The notes under the pieces are model-generated. The model had not been told where the DNA came from. It was given only the letters and a program-made list of their open reading frames with translations, and ran no database searches. Shown piece by piece: positions 967 to 61,700 of a stretch of 64,000 nucleotides of DNA; the stretch's first letter is position 1; the number at the start of each line of letters is the position of its first letter. The stretch comes from Mobula hypostoma (Eukaryota), in NCBI RefSeq assembly GCF_963921235.1, contig NC_086110.1, positions 13,516,001 through 13,580,000 on the forward strand, in the 5' to 3' direction. Position numbers and translations under genes: made by a program.

Positions 967-1098
967 TCACAGTTTCTTTGACGTATTCACATCAGCGTAC
1001 AATGTATGTTGGTTTTGATGTGTGAATCCTGAGGTGTTCTTGGAATCGGGAAGCTGCAGAGCAGCGTAGGTCAATTTGTCAGCTCCATTTCTTTTAGT
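967..1098 (-). CDS. Receptor gene 1, last exon with ITIM (LTYAAL) and ITSM (TLYADV)
   Basis: Acceptor ttttcacag|ACT (phase 0), reads TKRNGADKLTYAALQLPDSKNTSGFTHQNQHTLYADVNTSKKL*. The six exons sum to 930 nt, i.e. 309 aa plus stop. Confidence 0.85.
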   Translation of the reverse strand, partial: TKRNGADKLTYAALQLPDSKNTSGFTHQNQHTLYADVNTSKKL

Positions 1099-3520: not shown

Positions 3521-3522
3521 GT

Positions 3523-7703: not shown

Positions 7704-7802
7704 CGTGCGATCTCTTTAACTTGATTTTCACCAAAAGTATTATCAGAGCTAAAATTGCCGATCCGCCCACTGCACATGCCAGAATAAATTTAGTATCAAC
7801 GC
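7704..7802 (-). CDS. Receptor gene 1, exon 4: transmembrane exon (GVDTKFILACAVGGSAILALIILLVKIKLKRSH)
   Basis: Long pyrimidine tract then acaag|GC, donor G|GTAAGA, 99 nt, phase 1-1. About 20 uncharged hydrophobic residues followed by a basic stop-transfer stretch. Confidence 0.88.
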
Positions 7803-11224: not shown

Positions 11225-12545
11225 TTATCACAGCAGTTAGGATTTCGCTCTGCCTGCAGTAGCCATCCGGAGCTCACCGTTGCTCGACTCCCCGTAGCTC
11301 TTCATGCCCTAACCAATCAAGAACCTATCAACTTCTGCTTTAAATATCCATAAAGACTTCGTTTCCATAGCTGCCTGCGGCAAAAAATTCCACAGGTTTA
11401 CCACTCTCTTTTTAAGGCCTTCCTCCTCATCTCCTCTATTCTGAAGCTGCAACCTCTGGTCTTAGACTTTCCTACCATAGGAACATCCTCTCCACATTCA
11501 CATTATCAAGTACTTTCACCTTTAAATAGGGTTCAATACAGTCGGCCCTTATTTTCTGAATTCCAGTGAAAACAGGCCAGAGCCATAAAAGACTCTTCAT
11601 TGGATTAGCTAATGAATTCTGGAATCATTGTGAAGAACCTCCTTTGAGCCCTCTCCAGTTTCGGCACATGCTTTCCAAGATAAGGGGCTTAAAACTGCTC
11701 ACAATACGCCGTGACGCCTCACCAGTGCTTTATAAAGTCTTGATATTACATCATTGCTCTTATATTCCAGTCCTCTTGAAATTAATGCTATCATTGCATT
11801 TGCCTTCCTGCCCACAGACTCAATCTGCAAATTAACCTGTATGGAATACTGCACACGGACTCCCAAGTCCCTTTGCACCTCAATGTTTTAGATTTTCGTT
11901 CCAGTTAGAAAATAGTCAAACCTTTCATACCGTCCACCAAAGTTCATGACCACATACTTCTCGACACTGTATTCCATCCGCCATTTCATTGCCTATTCTC
12001 CTAGTCTGCTTAAGTCCTTCTGTTGCCTCTCTATTTCCTAAAACCCACCTGCCTGTCCACCTATCTTCATATTGACTGCAGACTTTGCAACAAAGCCATC
12101 AATTCCATCATCCATATCATTGACACACAACCTTAAATGAATCAGTCACAACACAGACCCCTGTGGAACACCGTTCGTCACGGGCAGCCAACCAGAAAAT
12201 GCTTCCCTTATTCCCATTCTTTGTCCCTTACCAACCAGCCACTACTTTCTCCACCCTTGAATCTTTCCTGTGATACTTTGACCTTGTAGCTTGTTAAACA
12301 GCCTTTTGTGTGGTACGTTGTGAGAGGTCTTCTGAAAATCCAAGTAAGCAACAATCGATTCTCCCTACCTTATCTAACCTGCTTTTCATTCCTTCAAATA
12401 ATTCAATCAGATTTTTCTGGCGAGAGTTTCCCTTGAGGAAATCATGCTGATATGGCGTGCTGTATTATACGTCTCAAAGTAACCTAAGACCTTATCCTTA
12501 ATAATGTACTCCAACATCTTGTCAACTGTACTCCAACATTTTGTC
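11225..12545 (-). mobile_element. Degenerate CR1 LINE
   Basis: Reverse-strand remnants of the DFQK and GVPQGS regions and a CR1-type 3' region. Confidence 0.8.
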
Positions 12546-14797
12546 GCCTCAAGTCTCCTACCTCCAGCCTCACCTCGCCTCAACTCTCCTGCCTCCAGCC
12601 TCCATCCTCCAGCATCGCCTCGCCTCAAGTCTCAAGTCTCCAGCCTCCTGCCAAGCCTCGCCACAAGTCTCCTGCCTCCAGCCCCCAGCCTCGCCCTGCC
12701 TCAAGTCTCCTGTCTCCAGCCTCCTGCCAAGTCTCGCCTCAAGTCTCCAGCCTCCTGCCTCCTGCCAAGCCTCGCCTCAAGTCTCTTGCCTCCAGCCTCC
12801 AGCCTCGCCCTGCCTCGTTTCCTGCCTCAAGCCTCCTGCCAAGCCTCGCCTCAAGTCTCTTGCCTCCAGCCTCCAGCCTTGCCTCGCCTCAAGTCTCAAG
12901 TCTCCAGCCTCCTGCCAAGCCTCGCCTCGTCTCTTGCCTAGCATCGAGCCTGAAGACTCCGATCTCTAGCCTCTAGCTTCTTTCCAAGCCGAGACAAATC
13001 TCTAGCCTCTAGCTTCAAGCCTGAAGACTCCAGCCTCCTGCCTCCTGCCAAGCCTTGTCTCTAATCTCTAGCCTCAAGTCTGCAGTCTCCAGCTTAATCC
13101 TGCCTGCCTGCCAAGCCTCGTCCTTGCCTAGTTCTCGGGTCCGAGCCAGTCTCAAGACCCAGGTACTGGGTCCTTGTCCAGTTCCTGCCTTGGAGTCCAA
13201 TTCGGGCTCCTAGTTCTCTTATTCAGTCCTGTTCCAGGTTCCTGGTTTTCCTGTCTATATTCTTGCCATCGCCCTGTATCCTAGTCCTGTTCCTGGTACT
13301 TCAGTGTCTGTGTCTTCAACTTGGGTCCATTCCCAGCCACCACCTTATGGCAGAACGATCCAGCCAATCATGGACCCAGCGACACAGACACTGTCGTTTT
13401 ACTCTGGGCTCCCGGGGTTCCTTTCTGTTAATTACCCTCCCACCTGCCCGGGTCGTCCATAGTCTGGATACTCTGTTTGGTCACCAGGATACTCCCGTAG
13501 AGAGGGGAGTACTGTCATGGTCTGGTCCGTGAAGTCCGTATTCCGGTTCACGGTCCAGTCCATCGACCCTTGCTCCAGGTTTTCCTGTTTACACTGTGCC
13601 TGTTCTGGTTGAGCTCTAATTGAGGCAGCTGATTCTGGTTGGGGCTGGCTGCATGAAAACCTCCAGAGACCAGGGTGTGGCTGCTGGATTGCTGTTGTCC
13701 TTACTCATTGTATCCCTTGCTCTGCCTTCTGTTTCCTCGCCTGAAACCCTGCCTTGTCTTGCCGGTAACTCTCGCCTCGTCTCGCCGGCAGTCTTGTCCT
13801 GGAGCCACCCTGTACCTAACTCCCTTCCTGTCCCTTCCCTCTGCCCAGGTAAGCCAGGCCGCCTTGCCGTTACCTGGGGTTACTTCTGTCCCTTCATGTC
13901 CCTTGCGTCCGCCCAGGTAAGCGAGGCCGTCCTGCCGTTACCTGGGGTTGGTTCTGTCCCTTCCTGTCCCTTGCCTCTGTCGGGTGGTGATCCGCGCCCT
14001 GCCCAGGAGGAGCCAAGCCTCGCCTCAAGTCTCCAGCCTCCTACCTCCTGCCAAGCCTCGCCTCAAGTCTCCAGCCTCCTGCCTCCAGCCTCGCCTCGCC
14101 TCAAGTCTCCTGCCTCCAGCCTCCAGCCTCGACTCGCATCAAGTCTCCTGCCTCCAGCCTCGTCTCGCCTCAAGTCTCAAGTCTCCAGCCTCCTGCCATG
14201 CCTCGCCTCGTCACTTGCCTAGCCTCGAGCCTGAAGACTCCAGCCTCTAGCCTCTAGCCTCTTGCCAAGCCAAGCCAAGTCTCTAACCTCTAGCTTCAAG
14301 CCTGAAGACTCCAGCCTCGAGTCTCTAGCCTCTTGCCAAACCAAGCCAAGTCTCTAGCCTACGGTCTCCTGCCAAGCCAAACCAAGTCTGTAGTCTCTAG
14401 CCTACGGTCTCCTGCCAAACCAAACCAAGTCTGTAGCCTCTAGCCTCTTGCCAAGCCAAGCCAAGTCTCTAGCCTACAGTCTCCTGCCAAGCCAAGCCAA
14501 GTCTGTAGCCGCTAGATTCAAGACTGAAGACTCCAGCCTCGTCCTGCCTGCCTGCCAAGCCTCGTCCTTGCCTAGTTCTAGGGTCAGAGCCAGAGGCAAG
14601 GCCCAGGTACTGGGTCCTTGTCCAGTCTCTGGCTAGGAGTCCAAGCCAAGGCTCCTAACTCTCTTCTTCAGTTCTGTTCCAGGTTTCTGGTTTTCCTGTC
14701 CATGTCCTTGCCAACGCCCTGTATCCTCGTCCTGTCCCTAGTACTTCAATGTCTGTGTTTTGCACTGGGGTCCATTCCCAGCCACCACCATATGGCA
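12546..14797 (+). mobile_element. Miniature Gypsy-type LTR element: truncated 5' LTR, 160-bp interior, full 3' LTR
   Basis: 5' LTR ends ...TATGGCA at 13352, followed by GAACGATCCAGCCA and a gag-like ATGGACCCAGCG at 13370. A PPT (AGAGAGGGGAG) precedes the 3' LTR, TGTCATG(13513)...TATGGCA(14797). Confidence 0.8.
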
Positions 14798-14888
14798 CAT
14801 ACATGGTAAATGATAGGGCATTGAAGAATGCTGTAGAACAGAGTGATCTAGGAATAATATGCTAGTTCACTAAATGTGGAATCTCATG

Positions 14889-16717
14889 GGGAATCTCGAG
14901 AAAAGGATTGGTCAAGACAAATGTAGGTCCCCTACAGACAGAAATATGTGAATTTATTATGGGGAGCAAGGACATGGCAGACCAATGGAACAACTACTTT
15001 GGCTCTGTCTTCACTAAGGAGGACATAAATAATGTTCCAGAAATCGGAGGGGACAGAGGATCCAGTGAGATGGAGGAACTGAGAGAAATACACGTTAGTC
15101 GGGAAGTGGTGTTAGGTAAATTGAAGGGATTAAAGGCAGTTAAATCCCCAGGGCCAGATAGTCTGCATCCCAGAGTGCTTAAGGAAGTAGCCCAAAAAAT
15201 TGTGGATGCATTAGTGATAATTTTTCAAAACTCTTTAGATTCTGGACTAGTTCCTGAGGATTGGAGGGTAGCTAATGTAAACCCCGTTTGAAAAAAGGAG
15301 GGAGAGAGAAACCGGGGAAATATAGACCGGTTAGCCTCACTTCGATCGTGGGGAAAATGCTAGAGTCAGTTATCAAAAGATGTGATAACAACATATTTGG
15401 AAAGCGGTGAAATCATTGGACAAAGTCCGTATGGATTTGTGAAAGGAAAATCATGTCTGCCGAATTTCATAGAAGGTTTTGAGGATGTAACTAGTGAGTG
15501 GATAGGAGAGAACCAATGGATGTGGTATATTTGGATTTTCAAAAGGCTTTTTACAAGGTCCCACACAGGAGATTAATGTGCAAACTTTAAGCTCACGGTA
15601 TTGGGGGTAAGGTATTGATGTGGATAGAGAATTGGTTGGCAGACAGGAAGCAAAGAGTGGGATGAAAAGGGACCGTTTCAGAATGGCAAGCAGTGACTAG
15701 TGGGGTACCGCAAGGCACAGTGCTGGGATCCCAGCTGTTTACAATATATATTAATGACTTAGATGAGGGAATTAAATGCAGCATCTCCACGTTTGCGTAT
15801 GACAAGCTGAGCGGCAGTGTTAGCTGTGAGGAGGATGCTAACAGGATGCAGGGTGACTTGGATAGGTTAGGTGAGTGGGCAAATTCATGGCAGATGCAAT
15901 TTAATGCGGATAAATGTGAGGGTATCCACTTCGGTGGCAAAAATAGGAAAACAGATTATTATCTGAATGGTGGCCGATTAGGTAAAGGCGAGTTGCAACG
16001 AGACCTGGGTGTCATTACACAACAGTCGTTGAAAGTGGGCATGCAGGTACAGCAGGCGGTGAAAAAGGCAAATGGTATGCTGGCATTCATAGCAAGAGGA
16101 TTCGAGAACAGCAGCAGGGAGGTACTACTGCAGTTGTACAAGGCCTTGGTGAGACCACACCTGCAGTATTGTATGCAGTTTTGGTCCCCTAATCTGAGGA
16201 AAGATATCCTGGCTATAGAGGGAGTACAAAGATGGTTCACCAGATTGATTCCTGGGATGGCAGGACTTTCATATGATGCAAGACTGGATCGACTAGGCTT
16301 ATACTCGTTGGAATTTAGAAGATTGAGGGGGGATCTTATTGAAACGTATAAAATCCTAAAGGGATTGGACAGGCCAGATGCAGGAAGATTGTTCCCGATG
16401 TTGGGGAAGTCCAGAACGAGGGGTCACATTTTGAGGATAAAGGGGAAGCCTTTTAGGACGGAGATTAGGGAAAACTTCTTCACACAGAGAGTGGTGAATC
16501 TGTGGAATTCTCTGCCACAGGAAACAGTTGAGGCCAGTTCATTGGCTATATTTAAGAGGGAGTTAGATATGGCCCTTGTGGCTAAAGGGATCGGGGGTAT
16601 GGAGGGAAGGCTGGTACAGGGTTCTGAGTTGGATGATCAGCCATGATCATACTGAATGGCGGTGCAGTCTCGAAAGGCCGAATGGCCTACTCCTGCACCT
16701 ATTTTCTATGTTTCTAT
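14889..16717 (+). mobile_element. CR1 LINE (same subfamily as 6293) nested in an older CR1
   Basis: 317-aa RT C-terminal ORF and a TTTCTATG tail. The flanks 14798-14888 and 16718-17375 are consecutive parts of a subfamily-2 CR1 (compare 18481 onward). Confidence 0.9.
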
Positions 16718-31574: not shown

Positions 31575-32030
31575 ATTGGCTATTTTATAAGGTTAATGCA
31601 AATATCTAGTCAGGCATATATGTAGCAGCAAAGCAATGCATAAAAACATACAGGCATGGCCAAAAAAGTACAGTTGTTGTTCTGACCAAACATTAGAATG
31701 GGAAAAGAAATACGATCTTAGTCATTTTGACTTGGAATTATTGTGGTGCCAGAGGTGGTTAATTGATATCTCAGAAATTGTTGATAGGCTGGAAACAGTC
31801 TCTAAAGATTAAAAAAAAAATGGTGCCAAAAATAAACCCGAGAAAACATCAAGTGAGTGACAGTCCGTAGGCGAAAACTTATTGATAATGAGAGAGATCA
31901 GAGGAGAGTGGCTCGACTGGTTCAAGATGACAGGAGGGAGACAGTAAACACATGTTAGAACAATGGTGTGCAAAAGAGTATCTCTGAACCAGCACGAACA
32001 TACAACAATACACTCAGTGGCTACTTTATT
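31575..32030 (+). mobile_element. Tc1-like transposon remnant
   Basis: Decayed HTH-coding stretch and a TACACTCAGTGGCTACTTTATTA TIR-like sequence. Confidence 0.55.
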
Positions 32031-32429: not shown

Positions 32430-33170
32430 TTAGTAGCAAAACTGCACTAACGGCGACTGCTTTGCCTGAATCTTCGGAAAGAGCGCTACTTCTATCCTTT
32501 TTTTCCTTCTTTTCAGGGGACCCTGAACTGGAGTTACACGTGGACTTCGGTTCTCTGCGGAAATGGAACTTTGTCTCAGGGCCTAAGGAGCGTCCGCTTT
32601 TAGATATTGCAAGGACGCGGCATGGAAAAGGGTTAATTTGGAGACGAGTTAATTCGAGGCTGGTGCCGCCGCCTGATGGGAGTACACGGAAGATGGAAAG
32701 CAGCGAGTTGACTGCTGACTGTGTGCCCAGAGACCCGGGTTCTTTGGGCACAGAGCTCGGAAAAAAGTGAAGTAACGGAATTTTGACACAATGAATCAGC
32801 GAGTTGTTTTGTTATGTCTCCCCTCTCACTGTGAAACGGAGACATCACTTTTTTCCCTTATTAGGGGGAGAGAAAGAGCTGTGGCTGTGGAAAACCGGGT
32901 GAATGAGTACTTTTTGCGAGTCGAGTCTGCCTTTCTTGATGCTTTGCTGCAAGCTTGAGTGCTCGGTTGTGGATGCAGCTGCTTTTTGCTGGTGTGTGGG
33001 GGTGGTCTTTGCGTGGGAGGAATGAGCTGGGGGGGGCTTTGGGTTTATAACATTTAACTGTCAGTCATTCTTCGGGGCATTCCTCTATTTTCGTGAATGT
33101 TTGTGAAGAAATAGAATTTCAGGATGTATATTGTATACATTTCTCTGACATTAAATGTACCATATAAAAC
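32430..33170 (+). repeat. Unclassified interspersed repeat, copy 1
   Basis: Shares aatcagcgagttgttt and gaatttcagga..tatattgta blocks with 52595-53445. Confidence 0.65.
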
Positions 33171-33623
33171 CTATTGAAATAAAATGGTTCAGATATATTT
33201 GAAAAGTATAGCTCCTTAATTAACTGCAAAGAAATTACTTCAAAATCTGAATTAATTGCTGACATGACAACAAATAATGTTGTCATCATTACGAGATAAG
33301 TTAAGTGAAGAGAACGTCGCGTAATTTAGACACCACGACAACGGCGATAACGTTCACATTTGTAACAATGTAAATGGGCGAAACAAAGTGTTGCTGTTCT
33401 CTCTGAGTAGGCTGGCATTTTTGTTCGCATTTTCAACACTAAAAACAGTCAATTATTCTTTGGTTGGAGGCACTTCCGCCTAACGGTCGGCTCAAGGAAG
33501 GTGTAAAGGACACTTCAAAGTTCACCATTGTCTCTCCTAAACCCAACTACGTTTAAATCAAACTAAAAATATATTGGACCTATATTTAGTCATAGCTTTC
33601 GTTGCGGAAGTTTGCTTCGACTG

Positions 33624-33761
33624 TCAGCTTCTCGTCTTCTTTAAAGTATGTACATCTGCGTACGTTGCACATTCCTGTTTCTGAATGAATGCAGATGTAT
33701 CTTTGATACTGAGAAGGTGCAGAGTTGCCGTGGCCAGCTTGTTAATCTTATAACTTGTGAT
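33624..33761 (-). CDS. Paralogous receptor gene 2, last exon (ITSYKINKLATATLHLLSIKDTSAFIQKQECATYADVHTLKKTRS*)
   Basis: Same tttcacag phase-0 acceptor as gene 1. Aligns without gaps: KLTYAALQL/KLATATLHL, KNTSGF/KDTSAF, TLYADVNTSKK/ATYADVHTLKK. Confidence 0.75.
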   Translation of the reverse strand: MTSYKINKLATATLHLLSIKDTSAFIQKQECATYADVHTLKKTRS

Positions 33762-34264
33762 CTGTGAAAGTAAATCATATTGACCATTAGTTCATCATCC
33801 TGCGGCTGCAGAGGCGCTTGAGTCTGTAAGAAAGTGGTCACGTGTATCTGTATCTCATTGATTGCCAGCGGCAGGCTGTAACCGCAATGTTTGTCGTTTA
33901 AAATAAGCTTTCTTTTTCTGATTTTCCATTCGGGCTGAAATCACGTGCTACGGTTCATCTGTCGTGTACAGAACAATGGTCGTGCTCATTTTAACATTCA
34001 GCCTATCATGTGAACGTTAATGCAATCTGTTTGAGGGTGCAGTTGAATGATAAGATCAAAGCTGCCGACGCTTTGAGATACTAATGTTGCAAATGATAAT
34101 TTTATGGATCGCCTACGGTCAAATTGACCTGCTGTTTATGTGCGTTGTAGATTCAGCCTGGGTGATTAATTGTAAAAAAAAACAGTGGGAAATAAAGTTC
34201 GATCAAAAAGCTGGCACGCCATACCTAGAAGGTTGAAAGGTGGACCTTTTTAGTTGAGTCTCAC

Positions 34265-34307
34265 TGTCTTCCTGCTCTGCACTAATTTCGGTCATTATGT
34301 GAATAAC
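34265..34307 (-). pseudogene. Candidate disrupted micro-exon of gene 2 (GYSHNDRN*)
   Basis: ccttcag|GT ... A|GTGAGA, 43 nt (the gene 1 equivalent is 44 nt). Has an in-frame TAG in phase 1 and shares TATTCACA-AAT with the 35346 micro-exon. Confidence 0.3.
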
Positions 34308-35345
34308 CTGAAGGCGAGGTACTCTTGCAACGTTCGAGAAAATATCTGGCTATATTTTTTGTGACGCTTGAGCAGGTTTAGATTTTCCCATTTTCTTTAA
34401 TTTTAAGTTTAAAGCTGAGTTGCAGTGAAATCATCAACCATCGTCAAACACAGACCCTGAAAGTAAAGCAAAGATAATTTTGAGTGTGGCAGAAGGGTAA
34501 AATGGGTGAACGGCTGAAACCTGTTTTTTTTAAACATGCAGATTCGCAAGTTTTGTAATTAGTGAAATTTCGTAAAATATCATAGGATTCACATTTAAAA
34601 TGTTTGTTTTCACAATGTGAAGTATTTTTAAAATCAAATATGCCTAGAAATATACGAATATCTGCAAAAATTCCCACATTAATATGCACGCTCCACATTT
34701 TTGCACAGTCACTTCAAACTGAGGAGCCATTTGTATTTCCGCCAAATGTTGAAGGCAGATTCCAGAGGAAATTCAAAATGTTTATTGCAAATATTTTGCA
34801 AATAAATATTTAATGCAGCCAGAATGGCTTCCTTCTGTTCAGCAAAGTTCTAAGATTCTACAGAATTAACATATTATTTGCTTAGCTTACTGCAGTACTT
34901 CTGCTCCTAATTCATCAATTAAAAAAAAACAAAGAAACGGTTTAATCTCAAGAAATTGTCTGATTCTCACCTCCTATCAAAGAATTATGCTTATAGTTGA
35001 AGGAAGGCCGGGGGATGGGAGGTGGAATCAATGAGCCTACCGATGAACATTGTATCATGATACAAATCGATTTTCTTGCCCAAAGTAAGATCGCCTGAAG
35101 ATATTTTCTGAACTAGTGTAGCAGTACATGTTATTCTAATATTGTGTTTTGTGTATTACGTTCACCTTCATCTTTTGTAAATTATATCCCCTCTCATCTA
35201 AAGTGCGTTTTTTCCAGTCTGAGTTACATTGTGCTTTCAGCTACTTCATAGGTACTGGTGCAAAAATCTACCTCAAGCATAACCATACAACACACTTCCA
35301 TGATTCGACCTCCAGCATAGTATCACTGAAGGGATATCTTCATAC

Positions 35346-35381: not shown

Positions 35382-36283
35382 CTAGATGACAGAGAGAATC
35401 AATTCGGAATTGATTTACTTCACTTCTGTTCGTCATAATGAAGCAATAACACCTGCCAAGCATTTAGTCGGTGGATCATTACATAGCGATCATTAAAAAA
35501 GTTATTTTCTTAATTTCCATTCAGATTCACAATATTATGAAAGCCATGTATTTTATTTATACAGACCGTACGCAGTCACAACACGTTTCTATGTTTGCTG
35601 TTCATATTGGGTTAGGTCCCAGTTAATCCGATCAAGGGAGAAGCTTTGAAATAGAAATACTTATCATTTAAATTGAAGTTAATTCTGTGATTTATTTTGT
35701 AAGATCCAACACAAAGGCACATGCGGCTTCAAATCAACCAATGCATGGCAAATACCGTATAACCAACTTAAACTTATACTTGAACGTTTCTGTAGAATTC
35801 CATTGCTCAACTTGTATGCTTCACAGTATTGTTTCAAGTAAACCAAATACAATTCAGTTTTGCGACTCACTCATATTATTTAATCACTAAATAACATCGG
35901 GTTGATATTTGAAGGCAAAGTAAATAGTGCAATGGTTTCTTGAATCTAGATTTTCTCTTTTGCCTCCACCTTCATTTTTGCATTCTGCTAATCACTTCCT
36001 TCCTTATTTCTCTCTCTGTTTTTCAGCTATTTCCAGATAATCTCTGTCCTACTTGATTCTCTACTGTTCACTTGTGAACTCCAGTGAACCTCCGGAATAC
36101 TGTGCGTCTCCAAGGTGCAATTTCCTTTTGGCAATTTATTTCTCCCTCATATCTCCAAAGAAGCAATGCTCCTGAATAACAAAATTGCGGGCATTTGATA
36201 TAGCATGCATTATCTTTCAGTCTCCGTATCAGAAAACTGAAAATCATTTTTCATCAGCAATGATCAGAAAACTATTCAGTTAC

Positions 36284-36388
36284 CTATTTTGATATTTGCT
36301 GAAAGACGAAGAATTTGGAATGCTAGCCCTATGGAAATGGTCAAAATTTGAAGGAAGATAGAAAATAAGCAACCACCTTCGTCAGTTT
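36284..36388 (-). CDS. Candidate TM exon of gene 2 (ETDEGGCLFSIFLQILTISIGLAFQILRLSANIKI)
   Basis: ttttccagtatag|AA ... G|GTAACT, 105 nt, phase 1-1. Hydrophobic stretch lying upstream of the gene 2 last exon; little similarity to the gene 1 TM. Confidence 0.4.
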
Positions 36389-38205
36389 CTATACTGGAAA
36401 AGCGATTGTTTTTATTTGTGAACCAAAGTATTTTGATTATGAACCCTGCTTTAAATGCTTGCATACAAGATAATATGGTAATAAAATATGACGAATTTTC
36501 TGACCTTTGAAAAAGTTTGTTAAAAATCTACAGTTGTAAAATAATAAGCACATCGTTTCAATTCCTGCGAATATCAAGATAATTTGACAACTGCAACTAA
36601 TGGGTGTTGGCTGAACACAAAACATTACGTAAACGGCAGGACAGTACTTTCCAAGAACAACTCATTTGGCAATAAAATGGAGACAAGAGAGTTCCGACGC
36701 TGGAACATGGAGCAACACAATAAGGGTTGGCGGAACTTAGCGTGCTGGGCAGCATCATGGGAGGGAAAAAGAGAGTCGACGGCTGGGGCCGAGCCTCTTC
36801 ATCTACACTTCATTGTCTAGCCAGGAAATTAGATAGTGAGGAACATCGAAATTAAACCTTCTAAACTTCATCCCACGTCTTCTCCTTGCCACTTTTGTAA
36901 CTGTTGGGTTCGAAATAATTGTTAACGATTTTATTTTCTATTATTTAATTAATTTTATTTCCATTCTTGAAACTTTATAAATGATTTAAATACTTTAAGA
37001 AGAAATGTTTTGTCAATCTGATTAAGATCAGAAATTGTCTCAAGTTACTTCTTCGTTTTAATGTGCGTGTCATTTATACAACCCAACGCCCTTAATACCA
37101 TCTATAATGGTAAACTCTTATAATGTATATGGCCTCGTTCCATAGAACTTTCCAAATATTCTATGATCTCGAATACGGAAAGTTGCTACAGATAATGTTG
37201 TTCTGATATCTTACCAAGCTTACTAATGAGTTCTGGTGGGTTGGACTCACCACATAATCGACACAAGTTGAAAAACACAGAAGAAAAGTAAATGCAGAAG
37301 GTTTTGGAAATAACCGATTAGTTCGGCACCTTCGTTGGGGAGAAGAAGTTGGCTGGGAGGCTTTCACCACGCGATAACCCGAAAAAATCTTAACCAGGCA
37401 TTTTCCACAGTTGCTTCCTGAGTTGGTGTAAGGCCTAAATTTGAAAAACCTCAGGCATTTGCTTCCGTCCACACTCACCAGATACTAACCAGCTCATTTA
37501 CTACCTTGCTTCTTTGCATTTATCATTTATAAATATAATGAAACTTCGTGGTCCTAGAAAAAACTCCAAATGGTCGCCAATTAGCCCATTAGTATAATAT
37601 GAATACCTTTTTATTCTGAATCCCATCTCTCGAGTCTTCACGCTCGAACCATTTCAACCTGCAACCGAAAAAAAATCTTCAATCCTTATTTTGTTAATCC
37701 ATTCTTCTGTGGAATAATTCTGATACGCTTTGACAATGCTGTATTAAATAAATGCACCATGATAAAATGTCAGTGTCCACAATGTCAATATCCCCTTTGT
37801 TTTAACTGAGATTGCGAAGATATCTTCCGTATTTAAAGTTAAGCATTACAAAACTTTTATCCACGCTCCAGATTTCTACTCCTGTTAGTAAACACATGAC
37901 AACACGGTAAAAACACTCTTAGTTCACCACTCCGCGTTCTGAGGGTTTAAACGGACAGAAAATACTATGCATATATAAACAATACTTGTCTAGCATTTTT
38001 TAGGATTTGTGCATAGATTCGTACAAGGCAATTTGTCCTTCTCAATATCCTATCATAACCTTAAGTGATTTCACCTAAATTCCGAGAGGCAACTGCTTTA
38101 TCTGGAAACAATCGACAATTTTTCCAACTGGACTTTTTCACGATACATTTGTTTGACGGATTAAAAGAGTTTTTCTCCTGGCATTGACTTTATATTGTCT
38201 ATTCG

Positions 38206-40189: not shown

Positions 40190-40420
40190 GTGAGTAAAGC
40201 CAAACAGAGTAATTTCTCAACTGCTAGCAAAATTCAGACTTGTGTTTAGTATTGTGGCTTTCTGGAGATTTCTATAAATACTGCTCTGTAGACCTAATTG
40301 TTTAATGCTGTTGTGTTATGATTTTGGGATGATATCAGTTGTAGATATCACTATTTGGACAAGGTATACACTATTTATGTTCCATAGTCTTCCAATTTTC
40401 TCTTTTAATTTAAGGTGATT
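40190..40420 (-). mobile_element. R4/Dong-like 3' remnant, copy 2
   Basis: KLKEKIGRLWNINSVYLVQIVISTTDIIPKS*HNSIKQLGLQSSIYRNLQKATILNT. Confidence 0.7.
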
Positions 40421-41255
40421 TGGATATGCATGGCAGATGCAGTTTAATGTTGATAAATGTGAGGTTATCCACTTTGGTGGTAAGAACGGGAAGGCAGATT
40501 ACTATCTAAATGGAGTCAAGTTAGGAAAAGGGGAAGCACAACGAGATCTAGGTGTTCCTGTACATCACTCACTGAAAGCAAGCATGCAAGTACAGCAGGC
40601 AGTGAAGAAAGCTAATGGCATGCTGGCCTTCATAACAAGGGGAATTGAGTATAAGAGCAAAGAGGTCCTTCTGCAGCTTTACAGGGCCCTGGTGAGGCCC
40701 CACCTGGAGTACTGTGTGCAGTTTCGGTCTCCAAATTTAAGGAAGGACATTCTTGCTATTGAGGGAGTGAAGAGTAGGTTCGCAAGGTTACTTCCCGGGA
40801 TGGCGGGACTGTCATATGTGGAAAGATTGGAGCGACTGGGCTTGTATACTCTGGAATTTAGAAGACTGAGAGGGGATCTTATTGAAACATATAAGATTAT
40901 TAAGGGATTGGACAAACTGCAGGCAGGAAGCATGTTCCCGCTGATGGGTGAGTCCAGAACCAGAGGCCACTGTTTAAGAATTAGGGGTAGGCCATTTAGA
41001 ACGGAGTTGAGGAAAAACATTTTCACCCAGAGAGTGGTGGATATGTGGAATGCTCTGCCCCAGAAGGCTGTGGAGGCCAAGTTTCTGGATGTGTTCAAAA
41101 AAAGATGGATAGAGCTCTGAAAGATAGTGGAAACAAAGGTTATGGGGATGAGGCAGGAACTGGATACTGATTGTGGATGATCAGCCATGATCACAGTGAA
41201 TGGCGGTGCTGGCTCGAAGGGCCGAATGGCCTACTCCTGCACCTATTGTCTGTTG
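40421..41255 (+). mobile_element. 5'-truncated CR1 LINE (227-aa ORF)
   Basis: WQMQFNVDKCEVIHFG...LYRALVRPHLEYCVQF, then the 3' UTR. Confidence 0.92.
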
Positions 41256-45087: not shown

Positions 45088-48000
45088 TATGTTTGTGCTT
45101 GTAATGCGCTCGCCGGGCCTTTGCGTGGAGCCGGAGAGCACTGGGCTGCAAGGTTTTTTAAGCACCTAAAGTGGTTAATTACGGTTTATCGAGATTCGTT
45201 AATTGTTGTTATTGCCTTGTGACGTTTGTTTTGAATAGCTCAGGGATTCCTTGTGACCTGTACTTTTCACGAGTACGGTCTACAAGTACTATCACTAACT
45301 TGGAGAAAGTTTCAGCCGGGCTGAGTCACTGATGATCTGTTGTTATTCCTATGTGTAAATTCTGATCACCATATCTACAGGTAGGTCCACGTGGCAGATT
45401 ACCCCTTCGAGACCCTCATTTTTTTCTTCACTCTCAATTGAAAGAGTTTGGGGTCTGGTGAACTGCCAAAAGGGAGTACCTCCATGGCATATAGCGTCCA
45501 CACGGCGTGATAAAGTTTCTGCGCTCCTGTGACTCAGTGGCTAAACCGATCTGCAGAACCTTAAGTTTGTATATACTTTAGTGAAGAATTTAACTCCACC
45601 CAGTATACCCAACGTGTTCTCAACAGAGGGAAGAATAAACTTCTACCACCTCACTGCATTATTCAGTTTTGTTAGATCAACACAGACCCTCACTGTGCAA
45701 TCTGACTTGGGACCAGAAGAGTGCATGCACACCAGACGGTAGATTCATTCACTCAATTTACCATGTCAAGCGCCTCCATTCTCTCAAATTCAGCTTTGAT
45801 GTTGTTTATCAGAAGAGGGTATATGGCTCGCAGTGGTTAGAGTGTAGGGCGCAACTCCTGGCCTCAATAAGATAAGGTAACCTTCTTTCAGTACCACCAG
45901 TCCAGAGAACAAGGATCTGTACATTTCCTGCCACCGAGCATTGTTTAGCGAATCCAGCCTTGCAATGTGGTTCAGCTTCTCGATGGCGTACCTTGTTTCT
46001 ACAAGGCATTTTGAACGATATACACATCCTCTTTTAACTGTTTTAAAGTTTTTTTTATACGGCTGGAAGCAAAGAACAGGTATTTCATCTAAGAGGAACT
46101 GGGCAAATATGATCCCCTATGAGCTCAATATTTTTATATGAAATTTGGAAACTGATTATTTTCAAACAATCCCACATTTCTCAATTCATCACCCCCCCCC
46201 CCCACCGCCCTCTAAGGGAAATCATGAGCAAGTCAAAAATGGGAAGTGAACACTACGTAATCCCTCTCCAGGACGCATCTTCCAGCATTCCACTGGGTGT
46301 CAGCCAGACCGAGGAATTGACGGACATGAGAGAGTTCTAGAGAGGATCATTTGCTCTCACACGCTTTCAGTTTCAGAGTTTCATCAATGGCTCTCAATCA
46401 GAAGCAGTGATCTTTGACCAAGCCCTTTTCCATTTACAAAAAAGAAAAAAAAAAGTCATGCTAAAGGATGATGTCATTATTTGAACTCCCGTTAAATCTA
46501 GCTCTCATAAAGTCAGAATGTGGTGCACTGGCCGAAATTGCAAAGATGATTTAGGAAGGCCGGTATGTGACTGGCCAGCCTAAAATAGCCCTAGTCGTTA
46601 TTCTATAGTAAATAGAATAAATTAAATATTTAACTCTTTTTGCGAGTTATCGAGTTTGATACAGAAAGACAAATACTATTGGAGCTGTGGAACACGTAAA
46701 TGATGTACGTTTAATAAAATTCCACGAAGAACCAAACGACCCCTAAAGATATGTTGAACTCTCCTGTATAATTTGTATTTGGAGATGACATATTATCATC
46801 CTGATTCGAAAGAATACGAGACGTTTGTGTGCGAATTGCTTAAACACAACGTGGCCGTTGTAAACCAGTCATCATACAGCCCTATCAGTGTGTGATCTTG
46901 GTTTAATGGCAATCAGATCCGATAGAGTTGGAAGCGAAATTCTGATACGTACTTTCTTTTCATGCGAAAGTAACACTGCACAAGGCTGATAAATTAATTA
47001 ATTCATCAGAGCCCTACATTACCTCGCTGAGTACTTTTATAAAACTTCCACTCTGAAATTGAATCCAATTTAAGCTAATCTAATTACTTACTTTATCATT
47101 CCTCACTACGACCACTCAACAACCATCTATTCCTCACAAGATCCGTTTTCACTCTAACAGAATGAAAAATTGTAGATGAGTCAGCAGGATCGTCCATCTG
47201 CCTCCCTCTAACTCATTCCCTTAACTCTGATGACATGGAATACATTTTTGAATGTGTTCTGTAATAATATTTAAAAGAAAATTAAAAATTAATTTGTAAT
47301 GCATATTTAACCAGCTTCGTTCCATATACCTTAAAATTCTGTGAAAATCAATCTTTTTCTTTATTAAATGTAATGTATCTACTGTCCACCTACCCCTTTT
47401 TGAATGGAAGTGGTTTTTTCCCCATCCATTTTCCTCTTTACATGCTTTCACAGTATTTCCGTTGATACCTTGAGGACAATTTAATAAAAACACAAAATAC
47501 TTTGTAAAACAATGAGCATACAAATAATTATCTAGCTCTCAAATGCAGTCATAATGTGATGTCTCTGATGTTAATTGAACTCCTTTTTTAAGTAATACTG
47601 TCTGAAGTTATGGATCTATCTGTAGGTCTTCAGATATACCAGCTGCCATCCAGATTATGCTACCGAAATGTCATATCTTTGTTCATGAGGTTTATTTTTT
47701 GTCGTCGAGTACCATTATTCCACATTTGCACTTTTTATATACATGATTTTTTAAAAAACTGGAAACTATTAGTAAAATAGAGGGCATTTAACCACTTAGT
47801 CCCTCGTATATTCGTTCTGCAAAAATTATCAACGAGCTAAAATTGCTAATCCACCCTGAGTACACGCGAGTATTAGCATAATTGTATGATGATCTACAGG
47901 AGCAAAAGATTAAATATGTAAATCACATACACGTATACATACACACATAAATAAATCAACTAGAATAGGATGTCTTCTAATCCTGACTGCAAAAATGTCA

Positions 48001-48502
48001 AGGTGCAAAATGACACCAATTGCGATTTAATGATGAGATTTACGAAAGGAAACAAATCACATTAATGTACATTTATTTCTACGAAGTTTATCTATTAAAA
48101 TAAAATGATGATGTCAGCATTTGTGTAAACATGAATAGTGTAGAGTAACGGAGAGTCATTAATACAATAAGAGAACCCAAACAGAGTGGGAACAAATAAC
48201 TTTCAGACCAGGCAATGCATAACGAGATGTTAACGGATGTAATCAAGCATTAGATGAAAAAGAACAAACGGGGCATTTTAAGAAGATGTGGCGAGGCAAA
48301 TGTAGCCATAGAAGAACATCTAGTGGATGGTGTAGTGGATGATCTAGTGGTAGCTGCAAACATGCGGTGCTGTAGAGAGTTGAATGTGATGACATTAAAT
48401 ACCTAGGAAAAACAAACTGGAAAAGAATGGATGGACACTTTGTACTGGGATACAGGTATACATATTAGACTACATGACCTTTTACGATATTTTGCTAGAT
48501 TA

Positions 48503-51418: not shown

Positions 51419-51869
51419 CAGTAACAATTTGCTTCCGTATTACTTGCTCAAGTAGCTCGCTAACTTTCTGAATTTATAACATTGTACTCTCTATGGCGTG
51501 TGATTCTGTATCTAGCACTTTAAAGGTGATTTTTCGTTGATATGGCTTACAAAGCTTCACGAGTGGCCAGCCGAACTCCAGTCACCGATCTGGACTGCAT
51601 TGCCCACTAATATTGGAAGCTAATTACTCAGAGACTGGAGCTTATCAAAATCTGTGCACAGACAGTCCCAAATATATCCGTTCCAGGTGGGATTTAAGTG
51701 TCACGCTTCAGTGTTCAGGAATTCCCATCTTGAAGCTGATTTTGCCTTATCTCCAATTTTTTATAGTAAAACTCTTAATTAAGTACAGCATAACTGACCG
51801 GCAAATGGTCCCCACCTTTGCTATACCACTATACGGTTTAGAGTTTAAGTTTTGTTTTGTCACATTTTT

Positions 51870-52590
51870 GTCGTATTTCAGAAGTTGTCTGCCTTACACA
51901 CACTAACGAGGTGGCCTATAGAGAAGAAGTCATCTCTCTGACACAGTTGTGTCAAAAAACAACCTTTTCCTCAATGTCGCAAAAACAAAGGAGCTGGCTG
52001 GAGATGACAGGAGGAATGGAAATGGGCGAACTCCTATTGAAATCAACGGATATGTGGTTGAGAGAGTAAAAAGCTTCATGTTCAGCGGCATTCACATCTC
52101 CGAGGACATCACGTGGTCTGTACATACTAGCAGTGTGTTCAAAGAAAGCACAATAGCTACTCTTTCACCTCAGACGGTTCGGGAAATTTGCTATGGGCCC
52201 CTAAGAACTTTCTACAAGGGCACAGTTGATAGCACCCTGACTGGCTGCATCATTGTCTGGTATGGGAAATGTACGTACCTCCCTTATTCGCCGGATTCTG
52301 CAGACAGTGGTGCGCACAGCCCAGCGCATCTGTAGTTGTGAACTTCACATGATTCAGGATATTTTTAAGACAGATATCAAAAAAGGGCACGAAGGATCTT
52401 TGGGGACTCGAATCACCCCAACCACAATCTATTCCAGCTGCAAAAGCTGGAAAACGGTACCGCAGCATGAAAGCCAGGACCAACAGGCTCCGGGACAGCT
52501 TCTTCCACCAGACCAGCAGATTAATTAATTCACGTTGAACCAATTGCATTTTAAGCTATATTGATTGTTCTGTTGTATATTTACTGTACA
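51870..52590 (+). mobile_element. Rex1/Babar-like LINE 3' fragment
   Basis: NNLFLNVAKTKEL, VERVKSFMFSGIHISEDITW and FYKGTVDSTLTGCIIVWYG. Confidence 0.8.
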
Positions 52591-55544: not shown

Positions 55545-56982
55545 TTTTCATACTCCGGTCTGTGAAGTCCATATTCCAGTTCACGGTACGGTCCATCGAC
55601 CCTTGCTATAGGGATTTCCAATCTACCCTGTTTCTGTCCTTGTTGAGCTAATTGAGTCAGCTGATGCTAGTTGGGGCTGGCTGCATAAATACCTCCAGAG
55701 ACCGGGGCGTGATTGCTGGATTATTCTTGTCTTTACTCCTTGGATTCCTTCCTCTGCCTTCTATTTCCTCACCTGAAGCCCTGCCAGTCTCGCGGGTTAC
55801 TCTCGCCTCGCCTGAAGTTCTGTCTCGCCTTGCTTTGCCAGAAGCCCTGCCTTGTCTTGCCGGTAACTCTCGCCTCACCTGAAGTTTTCGTCTTGCCTTG
55901 CTTTGCCAGTAGCCTTGTCTTGTCTTGCTGTCTGGTCCTGGAGCCACCCTGTACCTAGCACCTTTCCTGTCCCTTGCCTCCGCCCATGTAAGCCAGGCCG
56001 TCTTGCCGTTACCTGGGGTTGGTTCTGTCCCTTCCTGTTCCTTGCCTCCGCCCAGTTAAGCCAGGCCGTCTTGCCGTTACCTGGGGTTGGTTCTGCCCCT
56101 TCCTGTCCCTTGCCTCTGTCGGGTGGTTATCCGCGCCCTGCCCATGAGGAGCCAAGTCTCAAGTCTCAAGTCTCTTGCCTCCAACCTCCAGCCTCGCCTC
56201 GCCTCAAGTCTCCAGCCTCGAATCGCCTCAAGTCTCCAGCCTCGAATCGCCTCAAGTCTCCAGCCTCGCCTCGCCTCAAGTCTCCAGCATCGCCTTTAGT
56301 CTGAAGTCTCCAGCCTCGCCTCTAGTCTCAAGTTTCCAGCCTCGCCTCTAGTCTCAAGTTTCCAGCCTCGCCTCTAATATCAAGTTTCCAGACTCGCCTC
56401 TAATCTCAAGTTTCCAGACTCGCCTCTAGTCTCAAGTCTCCAGCCTCGCCTCTAGTCTCAAGTCTCCAGCCTCGCTTCTCGTCTCAAGTCTCCAGCCTCG
56501 CCTCTAGTCTTAAGTCTCAAGCCTCCAGCCTCCAGCCTCGTCTCTAGTCTCGTCTCCAGCCTCCTGCCAAGCCTCACCTCGTCTCTTGCCTAGCCTTGAA
56601 CCTGAAGATTCCAGCATCTAGTCTCTAGCCTCTAGCCCCTTGCCAAGCCAAGTCTCTAGCCTTACGCCTCTAGCCTCTCGCCTAGCCAAGTCTCTAGCCT
56701 CTAGCCTCAAGCTTCAAGCCTGTAGATTTCTGCCTCGTCCTGCCTACCTGCCAAGCCTCGTCCTTGCCTAGTTCTGGGGTCCGAGTCAGAGGCAAGACCG
56801 AGGTACTGTGTCCTTGTCCAGTCTCTGGCTCGGAATCCAAGCCCCGGCCTCCTAGCTCTCTTGTTCAATCCTGTTCCATGTTCCTGGTTTTCCTGTCCAT
56901 GTCCTGGCCATCGCCCTGTATCCTAGTCCTGTCCCTAGTACTTCAGTGTCTGTGACCGTTCACAGCCACCGCCCGTATGACA
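55545..56982 (+). mobile_element. Solo LTR of the 13513 family, with 24- and 26-bp minisatellites
   Basis: Colinear with 13513-14797 and ends TGACA. CCGTG lies on both flanks (55540-55544, 56983-56987). About eight copies of CCAGCCTCGCCTCTAGTCTCAAGTYT at about 56310-56515. Confidence 0.85.
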
Positions 56983-58751: not shown

Positions 58752-61700
58752 CTCCCCTTCCTCAGGGAAAAAAACTGTCGAAGACGATTTTTTTCAATAT
58801 CTATCACAGGGTTTTAAACAATACAGGGAATAACATCATAGACAAAGCAAAAATGGTTACAGTTTTCAACTTATCTTCTGGATAACTAATCAGCTATGAT
58901 GTTATCAGTACCTTTGACATGTTTGATTTTTAAGTCACCTTCCTGCAATATCGGACTCCAATTTAACAACCTTCTATTCTTATCCCTCATTTTAGTTAGA
59001 AACATCAATGGATTATAACCCATGTAAACCACAAGTGGTCTCTGAGCAAGGGAAAGGTTTTGAGATCTCAGATCATAGGCCTCAAAATGTTGTAAAGCCA
59101 GAATACCTGCTAGCAATTCCTTTTCAAAAGTTGAATAATTCTTCTGGTGTACATTAAAGTTCTTTGAGAAATAAGCTACTGGATGTTCAATGTCATCCAT
59201 TCCCTTCTGTAACAGTACTGGCCCAGCAGCTTCGTCACTAACACCTGTTGTTATAGAAAATAGCTTTGAAAAATCAGGTGTTTTGAGCACAGGATAATAA
59301 CGCACGACTGTTTCCAGACGTTTAAATGCCTCCTGGCAAAGTTCATTCCATTCAAATCATTCACTTTTCCCTAGGAGCTTTGTTAGGGGGAGAGCGATGT
59401 CAGCAAGGTTCTTCAATAACTTTCTATAATACTCAATCGTTCTTAAACTCCTTCTTAAAGCTTTCTTGTCGGTTAGAACAGGAACTTCAGCAATAGCTTG
59501 AATCCTGGCCAGTACAGAAGCCAGCTGGCCTTGGCCCACCACATAACCCAATATGTAACTTTCGCATGGCAAATTCACTTTTAGCAAGGTTCACAGTAAG
59601 AGTGGCCTTGGAAGGTCTGTCAAACCGTTTTTCCTCAGCTGCAATACGCTCTTCCCACGTATCATTCCAGACCATTAAGTCATTGATATCAACCCCTGTG
59701 CTTTCTAACCCTCCAATCACAGAAGTTATCATTCTTTGAAATGTTTCTAGAGCATTCTTCATCTCAAAGTGTAAAACATTGTATTCATACAGTCTAGACG
59801 GTGTCACAAATGCTGATATCTCTTTAACCCTCTCTGTTATAGGAACACCCCGGTATCCTTTTAACAAGTCAATCCTAATAAGGTATTTAGACTTCCCCAC
59901 TCTATCAATGCAGTCATCCATTCTCTTTCTTTGTTCATTCTTGTTTCTAATTCCTTGATCAACGCTTTTACTTTCCTCAAAGTTCACTTTGTGAAGATGC
60001 CATTTCTTAAGGTGGGCTAAATTCATAATGATGTCATGCACTGTACCTGTGCTCCATTTCAAATCAGCAATTAGTCCTTTACTTGTTTTTTCGGCTTTGG
60101 ATCCAACTGGTGGACATTATCAGTAATATTTTCCAAAACAATGGAATTTTGACATCTGGATGAGTCTAGATTCAGTGAGTAAACATGCCTTTCCATTCCA
60201 TTATCAGATTTCACGATTCCATTTTGTCCTACAACAATTCTCCCAGCTGCAATTCCAGTAACCAAGTGTCTTATTTAGACTCGACCATTTTGTAAACCTT
60301 GCTTAGCAAAGTCACAATGCTTACTAATTCACCTCCAGAGTTCTCTGAGTAGGGTCAAAGGTCCTTTTGGCCTGTAACTGAACACAGGTTCCAACATATT
60401 ACCCTTCACTGCCTTCTGAATCGAATCTCCAACAATAAATAAAAGGAGGGGAACCGCTCGTTCCCATTTTCCTCATTTCTCACACGATGATGTCCACCTA
60501 AAGGCATACTGTAAGCCATGTTTAAAATTTCAGCCTTGTAACCTTTCAAAACCACCACGTGACTTGCAGGCACAGTAGCTAGTCTCCACTTCTTCATCAA
60601 CATCCCATCTTTAAGGTAATATCCTACAGGCTCTCTCTGAACCTTCTCTCCTCTGAGAGCTATCACTCTTAAAACCACCATTCCAGAATCTTGCTTCTGT
60701 TCCTCGATACATTCCTTTCTCAACAAAGACAAGCCTTTCTTATACACCTTACCCTTATCAATTGTACTACCCTCTAAGTCCTGCTGAAATCTGGAAGGTA
60801 GAACAGTCTGTGACACATCATTATAATTTAAACCCCTGGTTTCCCTATCATAGGTCTCAAAAGCAACTTTGCTCATTAGCTGAATTGCTGAAACACTCTC
60901 ATCTTGGAGAGCTGTCAACATACCTCCATTGTTTATTAAACTCAGTACCATCATCAGGATGATCAGAATCAAGAATACATTATGAAAGAGACCAAGTAAA
61001 CTACCCATCTGATTACGACCTATACTTCGACTTGTATCCACAGCAACTTCCACTCCAAAACCACAACAATTCTCCTTTTCCTCCCCCATAACATCACCCT
61101 GAATAACAGCACGACCTTGCAGGTGCTTAAATGTCCAAACAAAATCCAACATAGCGGCACAGCAACTCTCAGCAGCCCTTTGTCCTACAAGAAGGGAAAA
61201 ACGGTCGCGCAACCAATCCAACCTTTTCCAGCACTTTATCCAAAAGTCCAGGAACAGCGTTTTTCCCATTACTTCCAGCAACATTGACCTCACCAGCTTT
61301 TAAATCACGGTCTACTACAAATGATTCAGAATCCCCACATTCCACTGCTACAAAGGTTAAACCCTTACTCACTGAACCAAATCCATCTGACACAAAAGGA
61401 CTACATTCCCTTTCAACCAAGTCAGAAAGCTCAGACCTCAACTGAGCCTCAACATAAGGATCAGAATCCTGTGAACTCACAGGTACTACAACAACCTTGG
61501 CACATTCCAGCGGAACAACTGCCTCTTCTGCGGTGTCATCACTTGTCCCAGTTTCATATTCAAGGTCATCTCGAACCTCCCAACTATTCTCTTGCCAACT
61601 GCTTTCTGGAGTAAACTCAACTTCTTGGGTTAAAACTTCGTCTGTTTTCTTAACAAGCCCCTTCAGGGTAGGGGCATCCTCTGCCACCGGTAATGCCCTT

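What the first reader, a model, noticed from the sequence alone, without database searches (positions are those of the whole stretch)
33624..33761. Hidden paralog whose last exon has lost the ITIM tyrosine
Seen: a 46-codon frame absent from the ORF track aligns without gaps to the gene 1 last exon and uses the same acceptor context. LTYAAL has become LATATL (no Tyr), and TLYADV has become ATYADV (Tyr kept, non-consensus residue at -2). It lies in the same orientation about 12.8 kb upstream of the gene 1 ATG. Known: paired-receptor clusters (KIR, Ly49, SIRP, NITR) evolve by duplication with loss of inhibitory motifs. Inferred: a tandem family in which this member has weakened or altered signalling.
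Basis: partly seen in the sequence, partly recalled or inferred. Interest (0 to 1): 0.75.

Follow-up and report, generated by a model that had tools for sequence, protein, structure and literature searches.

The report
Stranded tail exon of ray receptor
This is a real but decayed leftover of the last exon of a second SIRP-like immune receptor gene in the lesser devil ray; it is still spliced into a little RNA, but it cannot be read as protein there, so it is a gene fossil rather than a receptor with altered signalling.

Summary
On the minus strand, 33761→33624 is an open 45-codon frame plus stop. It aligns without gaps to the last exon of gene 1 (1098→961): 18/46 residues, 86/138 bases, in-window tblastn E 4.6e-5. 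Both exons follow the same TTTCACAG acceptor. LTYAAL has become LATATL and TLYADV has become ATYADV.

Gene 1 is the annotated Mobula hypostoma "SIRP-alpha-like" VJ-C1 receptor (P0009).

The reading as a working paralog with weakened signalling is not supported:
- No V, C1, exon-5 or exon-6 relative lies anywhere in the 30 kb upstream.
- The only other relic is a transmembrane exon at 47893-47793, which has three in-frame stops.
- In a closely related species the predicted acceptor at 33761 is used (GT..AG intron 34224-33762). The partner exon ends in TAG in the ITIM frame, so that frame is closed.
- Seven working family tails agree at 29-40 of 43 positions with each other. The hidden exon agrees at only 12-16, and its differences fall evenly over codon positions.

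Best reading: a stranded, decaying tail exon of a dead tandem paralog, transcribed at low level as non-coding RNA. The scan has flagged similar stranded ITIM tails elsewhere in this genome. Interest is low.

The parts
33624..33761 (-). Relic of the family's last (ITIM/ITSM) exon: 45 open codons plus TGA. The ITIM tyrosine is lost (LATATL). The second motif keeps Tyr but has Ala at -2 (ATYADV).
   Evidence: The acceptor at 33761 is used in a spliced contig of run X2.
33762..34224 (-). 463-base intron with GT..AG ends on the minus strand, removed in RNA of a closely related species.
   Evidence: table 5: the joint 33761/34225 skips 463 bases, with ends CT..AC on the plus strand. The sequence was checked.
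34225..34325 (-). Upstream exon, at least 101 bases, joined to the relic in RNA. It has no likeness to any gene 1 exon. In the phase needed for the ITIM-like frame it ends ...TTC TAG and has two more stops just before.
   Evidence: record 12; frames; no alignment to gene 1 in 1099-8400; no family-profile hit.
33221..33623 (-). Transcribed continuation past the stop codon. No AATAAA or ATTAAA signal lies within 1.2 kb.
   Evidence: record 8 (X1 contig 33221-33645, no differences, depth 3).
47793..47893 (-). Relic of the family's transmembrane exon. It is 101 bases against 99 in gene 1 and reads HHTIMLILACTQGGLAILAR**FLQNEYTRD*V, with three in-frame stops. The later part matches only after a frame shift.
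   Evidence: alignment score 41 against a shuffle maximum of 33 in 100; next-best family-profile hit, E 0.37, right strand and order.
967..1098 (-). Gene 1 last exon, the working comparison copy (tail of protein P0009).
51811..51904 (-). Match of 95 bases at 75% identity to gene 1 intron 3 (7961-8055), in the same order and orientation. This is doubtful evidence and is probably a shared repeat fragment.
   Evidence: It is more alike than the exons are, while the tail exon's own flanks cannot be aligned.

Best explanation
The stretch is the stranded last exon of a dead tandem paralog of the devil-ray SIRP-like VJ-C1 inhibitory receptor, which is gene 1 (protein P0009).

Inferred history: an old local duplication gave a second copy. 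That copy lost its coding capacity, and the TM exon relic and the tail exon are the only pieces still recognisable in this window. The tail has drifted, and that drift removed the ITIM tyrosine and the -2 threonine of the second motif.

Shown: the old acceptor at 33761 is still functional as a splice site, and low-level RNA joins it to a non-homologous upstream exon. In that RNA the ITIM-like frame is closed by a stop codon at the junction, so the motif changes have no signalling consequence. They are decay, not tuning.

Inferred rather than shown: the order of events, and which upstream Ig exons (if any, beyond the window) once belonged to this copy.
For: Homology of the exon:
- tblastn E 4.6e-5.
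- BLOSUM62 score 60 against 19 for the next best of 127,738 windows.
- Family profile E 0.003.
- Its best match among 34 family proteins is gene 1's own tail.

No intact gene around it:
- No V, C1, exon-5 or exon-6 relative in 21.5-64 kb by tblastn, motif scan or family profile.
- No Pfam domain in the ten nearby ORFs.
- The public annotation calls no gene in the 10 kb upstream of gene 1, that is up to 30,833; this does not reach the exon at 33.6 kb.

Disabling lesions:
- The TM relic at 47893-47793 has three in-frame stops and the wrong length.
- The spliced RNA partner exon ends in TAG in the required phase.

Drift:
- Seven working tails from two Mobula species and Hypanus are 29-40/43 identical to each other, with 25 invariant columns.
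- The hidden exon is 12-16/43 identical to them and keeps 10 of the 25 invariant columns.
- Differences from gene 1 by codon position are 19/14/18, and NG86 gives dN 0.50 and dS 0.82.
- The open frame carries little weight: 12% of neutrally mutated tails stay open.

Transcription:
- X2 has a spliced contig, and an X1 contig covers 33221-33645 exactly.
- No run holds 47500-48200.
Against: - The 45-codon frame is still open and ends at the same TGA that closes the longer Hypanus and Heterodontus tails. This could reflect residual constraint.
- Homology is confined to the exon and the flanks cannot be aligned. That allows a long functional life after duplication, and possibly a working copy in other species.
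- The RNA evidence is thin. There is one low-depth spliced contig from a related species and one depth-3 contig from the same species label. The run type is only guessed to be RNA, and other isoforms with other upstream exons cannot be excluded.
- Ig exons could lie beyond 64 kb. Unverified scan notes place a leader-VJ-C1 pseudogene and a tail-less VJ-C1-TM gene 14-27 kb past the window's end.
- The TM relic's homology is only moderately significant.
Confidence: 0.72

Rival explanations
1. Working divergent paralog. The exon ends a live receptor whose Ig and TM exons lie far upstream, perhaps beyond the window. Its tail has lost the ITIM and kept one tyrosine, giving weakened or altered signalling.
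For: - The frame is open and keeps YADV.
- The acceptor is used in RNA.
- The cluster continues beyond the window, with more VJ-C1 genes according to unverified scan notes.
- Conservation is confined to the exon.
Against: - The only observed splice partner closes the frame with TAG.
- No exon-5 or exon-6 relatives were found, and the TM relic has three stops.
- Only 10 of 25 family-invariant tail positions are kept.
- Differences are even across codon positions.
- No protein with such a tail was found among 1.84 billion representatives or among the 34 family proteins fetched.
Confidence: 0.1
2. Exapted non-coding exon. The relic now serves as the long terminal exon of a spliced non-coding RNA just upstream of gene 1's promoter, and that RNA has a role of its own, for example influencing gene 1 transcription.
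For: - A GT-AG splice into 33761 exists in a related species, so the splice is conserved across at least two species.
- Contigs of X2 lie at 31.2-33.3 kb and 35.8-36.9 kb, suggesting a longer transcribed unit.
- The region 33.2-37.2 kb is unique in the window.
Against: - Depth is very low, 3-15.
- There is no poly(A) signal nearby and no Rfam family.
- Two of the three runs with the window's own species label show nothing.
- Low-level splicing of dead exons is common and needs no function.
Confidence: 0.15
3. Chance resemblance of an AT-rich open frame to the gene 1 tail.
For: The alignment is short (46 codons) and only 39% identical.
Against: - In-window E 4.6e-5.
- Score 60 against a next-best of 19 in 127,738 windows.
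- An independent hit with a Mobula birostris protein at E 4e-4.
- The same acceptor octamer, and that acceptor is used in RNA.
Confidence: 0.01

Closest known systems
Elasmobranch SIRP-alpha-like VJ-C1 ITIM receptors (gene 1 = P0009 of Mobula hypostoma; relatives in M. birostris, Hypanus sabinus, Hemitrygon akajei, sharks and Callorhinchus)
   Same: The last exon is homologous and has the same acceptor. It shares the KL..A.L ... YADV..KK skeleton and the same stop position as the longer Hypanus and Heterodontus tails. It sits in the same orientation within the same cluster.
   Different: It has no V, C1, exon-5 or exon-6 in reach and its TM exon is broken. The ITIM Tyr is lost, although (N/D)KLTYA is otherwise kept in every full-length tail fetched, from chimaera to rays. 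It is not translatable in the observed RNA.
Mammalian paired receptors (SIRP alpha/beta, KIR, Ly49), in which activating or decoy members arise from inhibitory ones
   Different: In those families the derived member keeps an intact ectodomain and usually gains a charged TM residue and a short tail. Here the ectodomain exons are missing, the TM relic has no charged residue and is broken, and the tail is not translated.
Transcribed pseudogene fragments and stranded terminal exons
   Same: It is homologous to a working gene, carries disabling lesions, shows relaxed sequence drift, and has residual splicing from a surviving splice site.
   Different: Nothing notable. The scan's own notes describe comparable stranded ITIM tails elsewhere in this genome (unverified).

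Membership tests
Ray SIRP-like VJ-C1 inhibitory receptor (working member) | Tail exon homologous to the family's last exon | tested here: met
Ray SIRP-like VJ-C1 inhibitory receptor (working member) | V(J) and C1 Ig exons upstream in the same orientation | tested here: not met
   None found in 21.5-64 kb by tblastn, Ig motif scan or family profile. The region beyond 64 kb cannot be read here.
Ray SIRP-like VJ-C1 inhibitory receptor (working member) | Intact transmembrane exon (99 bases, phase 1 to phase 1) | tested here: not met
   The relic at 47893-47793 is 101 bases long with three in-frame stops.
Ray SIRP-like VJ-C1 inhibitory receptor (working member) | ITIM (I/V/L/S)xYxx(L/V/I) in the tail; the family form is KLTYAxL | tested here: not met
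   The sequence is KLATATL, with no Tyr. The consensus is from general knowledge.
Ray SIRP-like VJ-C1 inhibitory receptor (working member) | Second motif TxYxx(V/I) (ITSM-like; the family form is (T/A)LYADV) | tested here: inconclusive
   The sequence is ATYADV: Tyr and +3 Val are kept, with Ala at -2. Five of the seven working ray tails compared read HALYADV. In those the residue at -2 is also Ala, so this change alone is not diagnostic.
Ray SIRP-like VJ-C1 inhibitory receptor (working member) | Transcript that reads into the tail exon in phase 0 | tested here: not met
   The only junction seen has TAG as the last codon of the upstream exon in that phase.
Activating partner of a paired receptor | Intact ectodomain, charged residue in the TM segment, short tail | tested here: not met
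   No ectodomain exons were found. The TM relic IMLILACTQGGLAILA has no Lys or Arg and is broken.
Pseudogene or stranded exon | Homology to a working gene plus disabling lesions | tested here: met
Pseudogene or stranded exon | Neutral evolution of the exon itself | tested here: inconclusive
   Differences by codon position are 19/14/18, and pairwise dN/dS is 0.61. Only 10 of 25 invariant positions are kept. No ortholog was available for a branch test, and the frame is still open (12% expected by chance).

The most novel reading that the evidence does not exclude
The exon might be a rarely used alternative terminal exon of one of the upstream VJ-C1-TM genes of the cluster; unverified scan notes say one of these has lost its inhibitory tail. 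That would give a minor isoform with a single-tyrosine (YADV) tail, a living intermediate in the conversion of an inhibitory receptor into a tail-less one.
Probability: 0.05. Interest if true: 0.5.

Novelty: new member of a known kind. Interest (0 to 1): 0.15.

Why it matters
It matters little on its own. It is one more fossil showing that the devil-ray SIRP-like cluster evolves by tandem duplication followed by loss or stranding of the inhibitory tail exons. Other notes of this scan show the same pattern.

It is useful as a marker for reconstructing the history of the cluster. It is also a caution that an open frame with a plausible motif change is not evidence of tuned signalling.

Tried and rejected
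- Plus-strand reading of the coordinates: it has a stop, and the frame is on the minus strand.
- Search for partner exons: tblastn with gene 1 exons and with five family proteins, an Ig-motif regex and a family HMM on six-frame pieces found no V, C1, exon-5 or exon-6 relic upstream.
- Hydrophobic-segment scan: it gave only the TM relic and a few AT-rich chance stretches.
- The partner exon 34325-34225 aligned to gene 1 (1099-8400): nothing beyond a poly-T run.
- HMMER search of 1.84 billion representatives with the 45-residue peptide: the two hits are repeat proteins that match a short motif many times, so they are spurious. This negative is weak, because close family members collapse into one representative.
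- Pfam on ten nearby ORFs: nothing.
- Rfam on 30-53 kb: nothing.
- The look-up of encoding contigs: P0009 was found but no DNA was served. No gene is called in the 10 kb upstream of gene 1, which reaches only to 30,833. P0003 is not on record.
- Colinearity evidence considered and set aside: the match 51811-51904 to 7961-8055 and the block 55.5-57.0 kb to 12.5-14.8 kb are 75-82% alike. That is more alike than the exons (62%), while the tail exon's own flanks cannot be aligned. They are therefore most likely younger repeat copies.
- My own first inference that exon-only conservation proves a long functional life: withdrawn. A constrained gene 1 branch plus a neutral relic branch gives about the same picture.
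- Run search on the TM relic (47500-48200): no holder was listed.
- Operator limits: read laying was limited to one 6,000-base call and was kept within that limit.

Full report
**1. Observation**

The coordinates are right, but the frame is on the minus strand. The plus strand has a stop. Read 33761→33624, the sequence gives 45 sense codons and TGA: ITSYKINKLATATLHLLSIKDTSAFIQKQECATYADVHTLKKTRS*. The last exon of gene 1, read 1098→961, gives TKRNGADKLTYAALQLPDSKNTSGFTHQNQHTLYADVNTSKKL*S*.

The two align without gaps at 18/46 residues and 86/138 bases, and both follow the octamer TTTCACAG.

The likeness is far beyond chance:
- tblastn of either tail against the window finds the other at E about 4.6e-5.
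- The ungapped BLOSUM62 score is 60, against 19 for the next best of 127,738 six-frame windows.
- The tail of a Mobula birostris family protein hits the frame at E 4e-4.
- A profile of 11 family proteins ranks it directly after gene 1's own seven exons, at E 0.003.

The motif changes are as described: LTYAAL→LATATL and TLYADV→ATYADV. The distance to the gene 1 ATG (20833) is 12,791 bases, in the same orientation.

**2. What gene 1 is**

The scan's earlier notes name the genome as the lesser devil ray and gene 1 as a SIRP-like receptor. I confirmed this. Protein P0009 (346 aa, Mobula hypostoma, named [quoted passage not shown] by its source) matches the window's exons:

| Exon | Window coordinates (minus strand) |
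|---|---|
| Leader | from 20833 |
| VJ | 20575-20270 |
| C1 | 8699-8406 |
| TM | 7802-7704 |
| Exon 5 | about 5856-5812 |
| Exon 6 | 3823-3713 |
| Tail | 1098-967 |

Relatives occur in M. birostris, Hypanus, Hemitrygon, several sharks and Callorhinchus. Every full-length tail fetched keeps (N/D)KLTYA.

**3. What surrounds the hidden exon**

If this were a live paralog built like gene 1, exons 6, 5, TM, C1 and VJ should lie upstream, at higher coordinates on the minus strand. tblastn with gene 1's exons and with family proteins, an Ig-hallmark scan and the family profile found no V, C1, exon-5 or exon-6 relative anywhere in 21.5-64 kb. The ten larger ORFs nearby have no Pfam domain.

The only further relic is a TM-exon relative at 47893-47793. 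It is the best local alignment of the gene 1 TM exon in the whole 30 kb, with a score of 41 against a shuffle maximum of 33 in 100. It is also the next-best family-profile hit, on the right strand and in the right order (E 0.37).

It reads HHTIMLILACTQGGLAILAR**FLQNEYTRD*V. The family frame runs into TGA TAA after 20 codons, with a third stop later. The later part (LIIF...) matches only in another frame. The exon is 101 bases instead of 99. So the one other recognisable piece of this copy is broken.

**4. RNA**

- Run X2 comes from a different organism label and differs from the window by about 2-5%. It holds a 288-base contig that joins 34325-34225 directly to 33761-33576. The 463 skipped bases begin with GT and end with AG on the minus strand.
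- The same run has some depth inside the intron (bin 34001-34200). This fits a mix of spliced and unspliced RNA better than a genomic deletion.
- Run X1 carries the window's own species label. It holds an exact 425-base contig at 33221-33645 at depth 3, and none of the words of 47500-48200. Runs X3 and X4 show nothing unique.
- The run type is only guessed to be RNA, so for the window's own species the evidence of transcription is weak.

The decisive point is the reading frame. The partner exon ends ...AAG GTC CAC CTT TCA ACC TTC TAG|gt in the phase that the ITIM-like frame needs, and it has two more stops in the 30 codons before. The ITIM-like frame has no ATG of its own. The only open phase of the partner exon reads the relic in another frame (SQVIRLTSW...YIL*).

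The partner exon has no likeness to gene 1 or to the family profile. No AATAAA or ATTAAA follows within 1.2 kb.

**5. Drift**

Seven working tails (gene 1, two more from M. hypostoma, two from M. birostris, two from Hypanus) agree at 29-40 of 43 positions, with 25 invariant columns. The hidden exon agrees at 12-16 and keeps 10 of the 25.

Its differences from gene 1 fall 19/14/18 on codon positions 1/2/3, and NG86 gives dN 0.50 and dS 0.82. There is no excess at third positions.

The open frame carries little weight. 12% of gene 1 tails given the same number of random substitutions stay open, and 4% of random sequence does.

The flanks of the exon cannot be aligned (upstream p about 0.4, downstream p about 0.2 against shuffles). 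This can mean an old copy that was functional for some time. It can equally mean a relic evolving neutrally against a constrained partner, because flanks diverge on both branches and the exon mainly on one. I therefore do not claim a date.

Hints point both ways:
- The relic's best match among 34 family proteins is gene 1's own tail, with which it shares TS.F.
- It also keeps the shark and chimaera NKL and the terminal ..RS seen in Heterodontus.

**6. Explanation**

The simplest account is a dead tandem paralog. Its tail exon survives as a recognisable, still-spliceable but untranslatable fossil, and its TM exon survives as a broken relic. The loss of the ITIM tyrosine is part of that decay.

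A working receptor with altered signalling would need exons that are not in the window and a splice form that was not seen. I give it about 0.1. A functional non-coding use of the transcript cannot be excluded (about 0.15), but nothing requires it.

**7. Context from the scan (unverified leads)**

Beyond the window's end the notes list three features:
- a leader-VJ-C1 pseudogene, about 14 kb on
- an intact VJ-C1-TM gene said to have lost its inhibitory tail, about 21 kb on
- another ITIM-like tail remnant, about 29 kb on

Elsewhere in the genome, follow-ups describe stranded ITIM tail exons and a rearranged tail. So the scan has seen this kind of thing before on other DNA of this genome, and the present relic may be the 3' half of the noted pseudogene. 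I could not read that DNA.

**8. Comparison and novelty**

By homology it belongs with the elasmobranch SIRP-like VJ-C1 family, but it fails every test of a working member except tail homology. It is not an activating partner.

It is a new, unannotated, decayed member of a known kind, and its interest is low.

**9. Limits**

- Only one lay of reads was allowed.
- Only contigs, not raw reads, were available.
- The runs' nature as RNA is guessed.
- The window ends at 64 kb.
- No ortholog DNA could be fetched.

Noticed in passing
window 33001-33200 (also 31600-32000 and 32600-33000): Short repeat-like segments have very high summed contig depth in all four runs, up to about 18,000 at 33001-33200, with many loose ends at 33156-33161. 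This is probably an abundant, transcribed SINE-like element just downstream of the relic exon, and it breaks the contigs.
   Followed up: no
window 12483-14806 and 55548-56954: Two GC-rich (about 50%) blocks of Pro/Ser/Leu-coding tandem repeats (…PASSLQPPA…) are 70-82% alike and in the same orientation. One lies in gene 1's VJ-C1 intron and the other is upstream of the relics. They are probably copies of one repeat-bearing mobile element rather than traces of the old duplication.
   Followed up: partly
window 5856-5755, minus strand: The M. birostris protein P0001 ends in a read-through of the exon-5 donor (…CQNAEPVRVVVPLLSERRIYIADTL). The equivalent read-through in gene 1 hits a stop (…EPVGEVARLLSE*). 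Short tail-less isoforms or paralogs of this family therefore arise by intron read-through.
   Followed up: no
window 6395-7531 (-), 15666-16643 (+), 40419-41117 (+), 58889-64000 (-): Reverse-transcriptase fragments of LINE-like elements lie inside gene 1's introns and between the relics. A Ty3/gypsy-like pol and gag-like ORF run lies at the window's end. Transposon load explains the long introns.
   Followed up: no
window 35764-36902: Run X2 (a related species) has about 1.1 kb of contigs at depth 10-15 over unique sequence with no ORF of known family. This is possibly the 5' part of the same non-coding transcript that splices into 33761.
   Followed up: partly
window 3823-3713 (gene 1 exon 6): Gene 1 carries two further tyrosine motifs upstream of the tail exon, TEYAPL and IIYSQT. 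The first is absent from the M. birostris paralog P0003 (TPHVSL).
   Followed up: no
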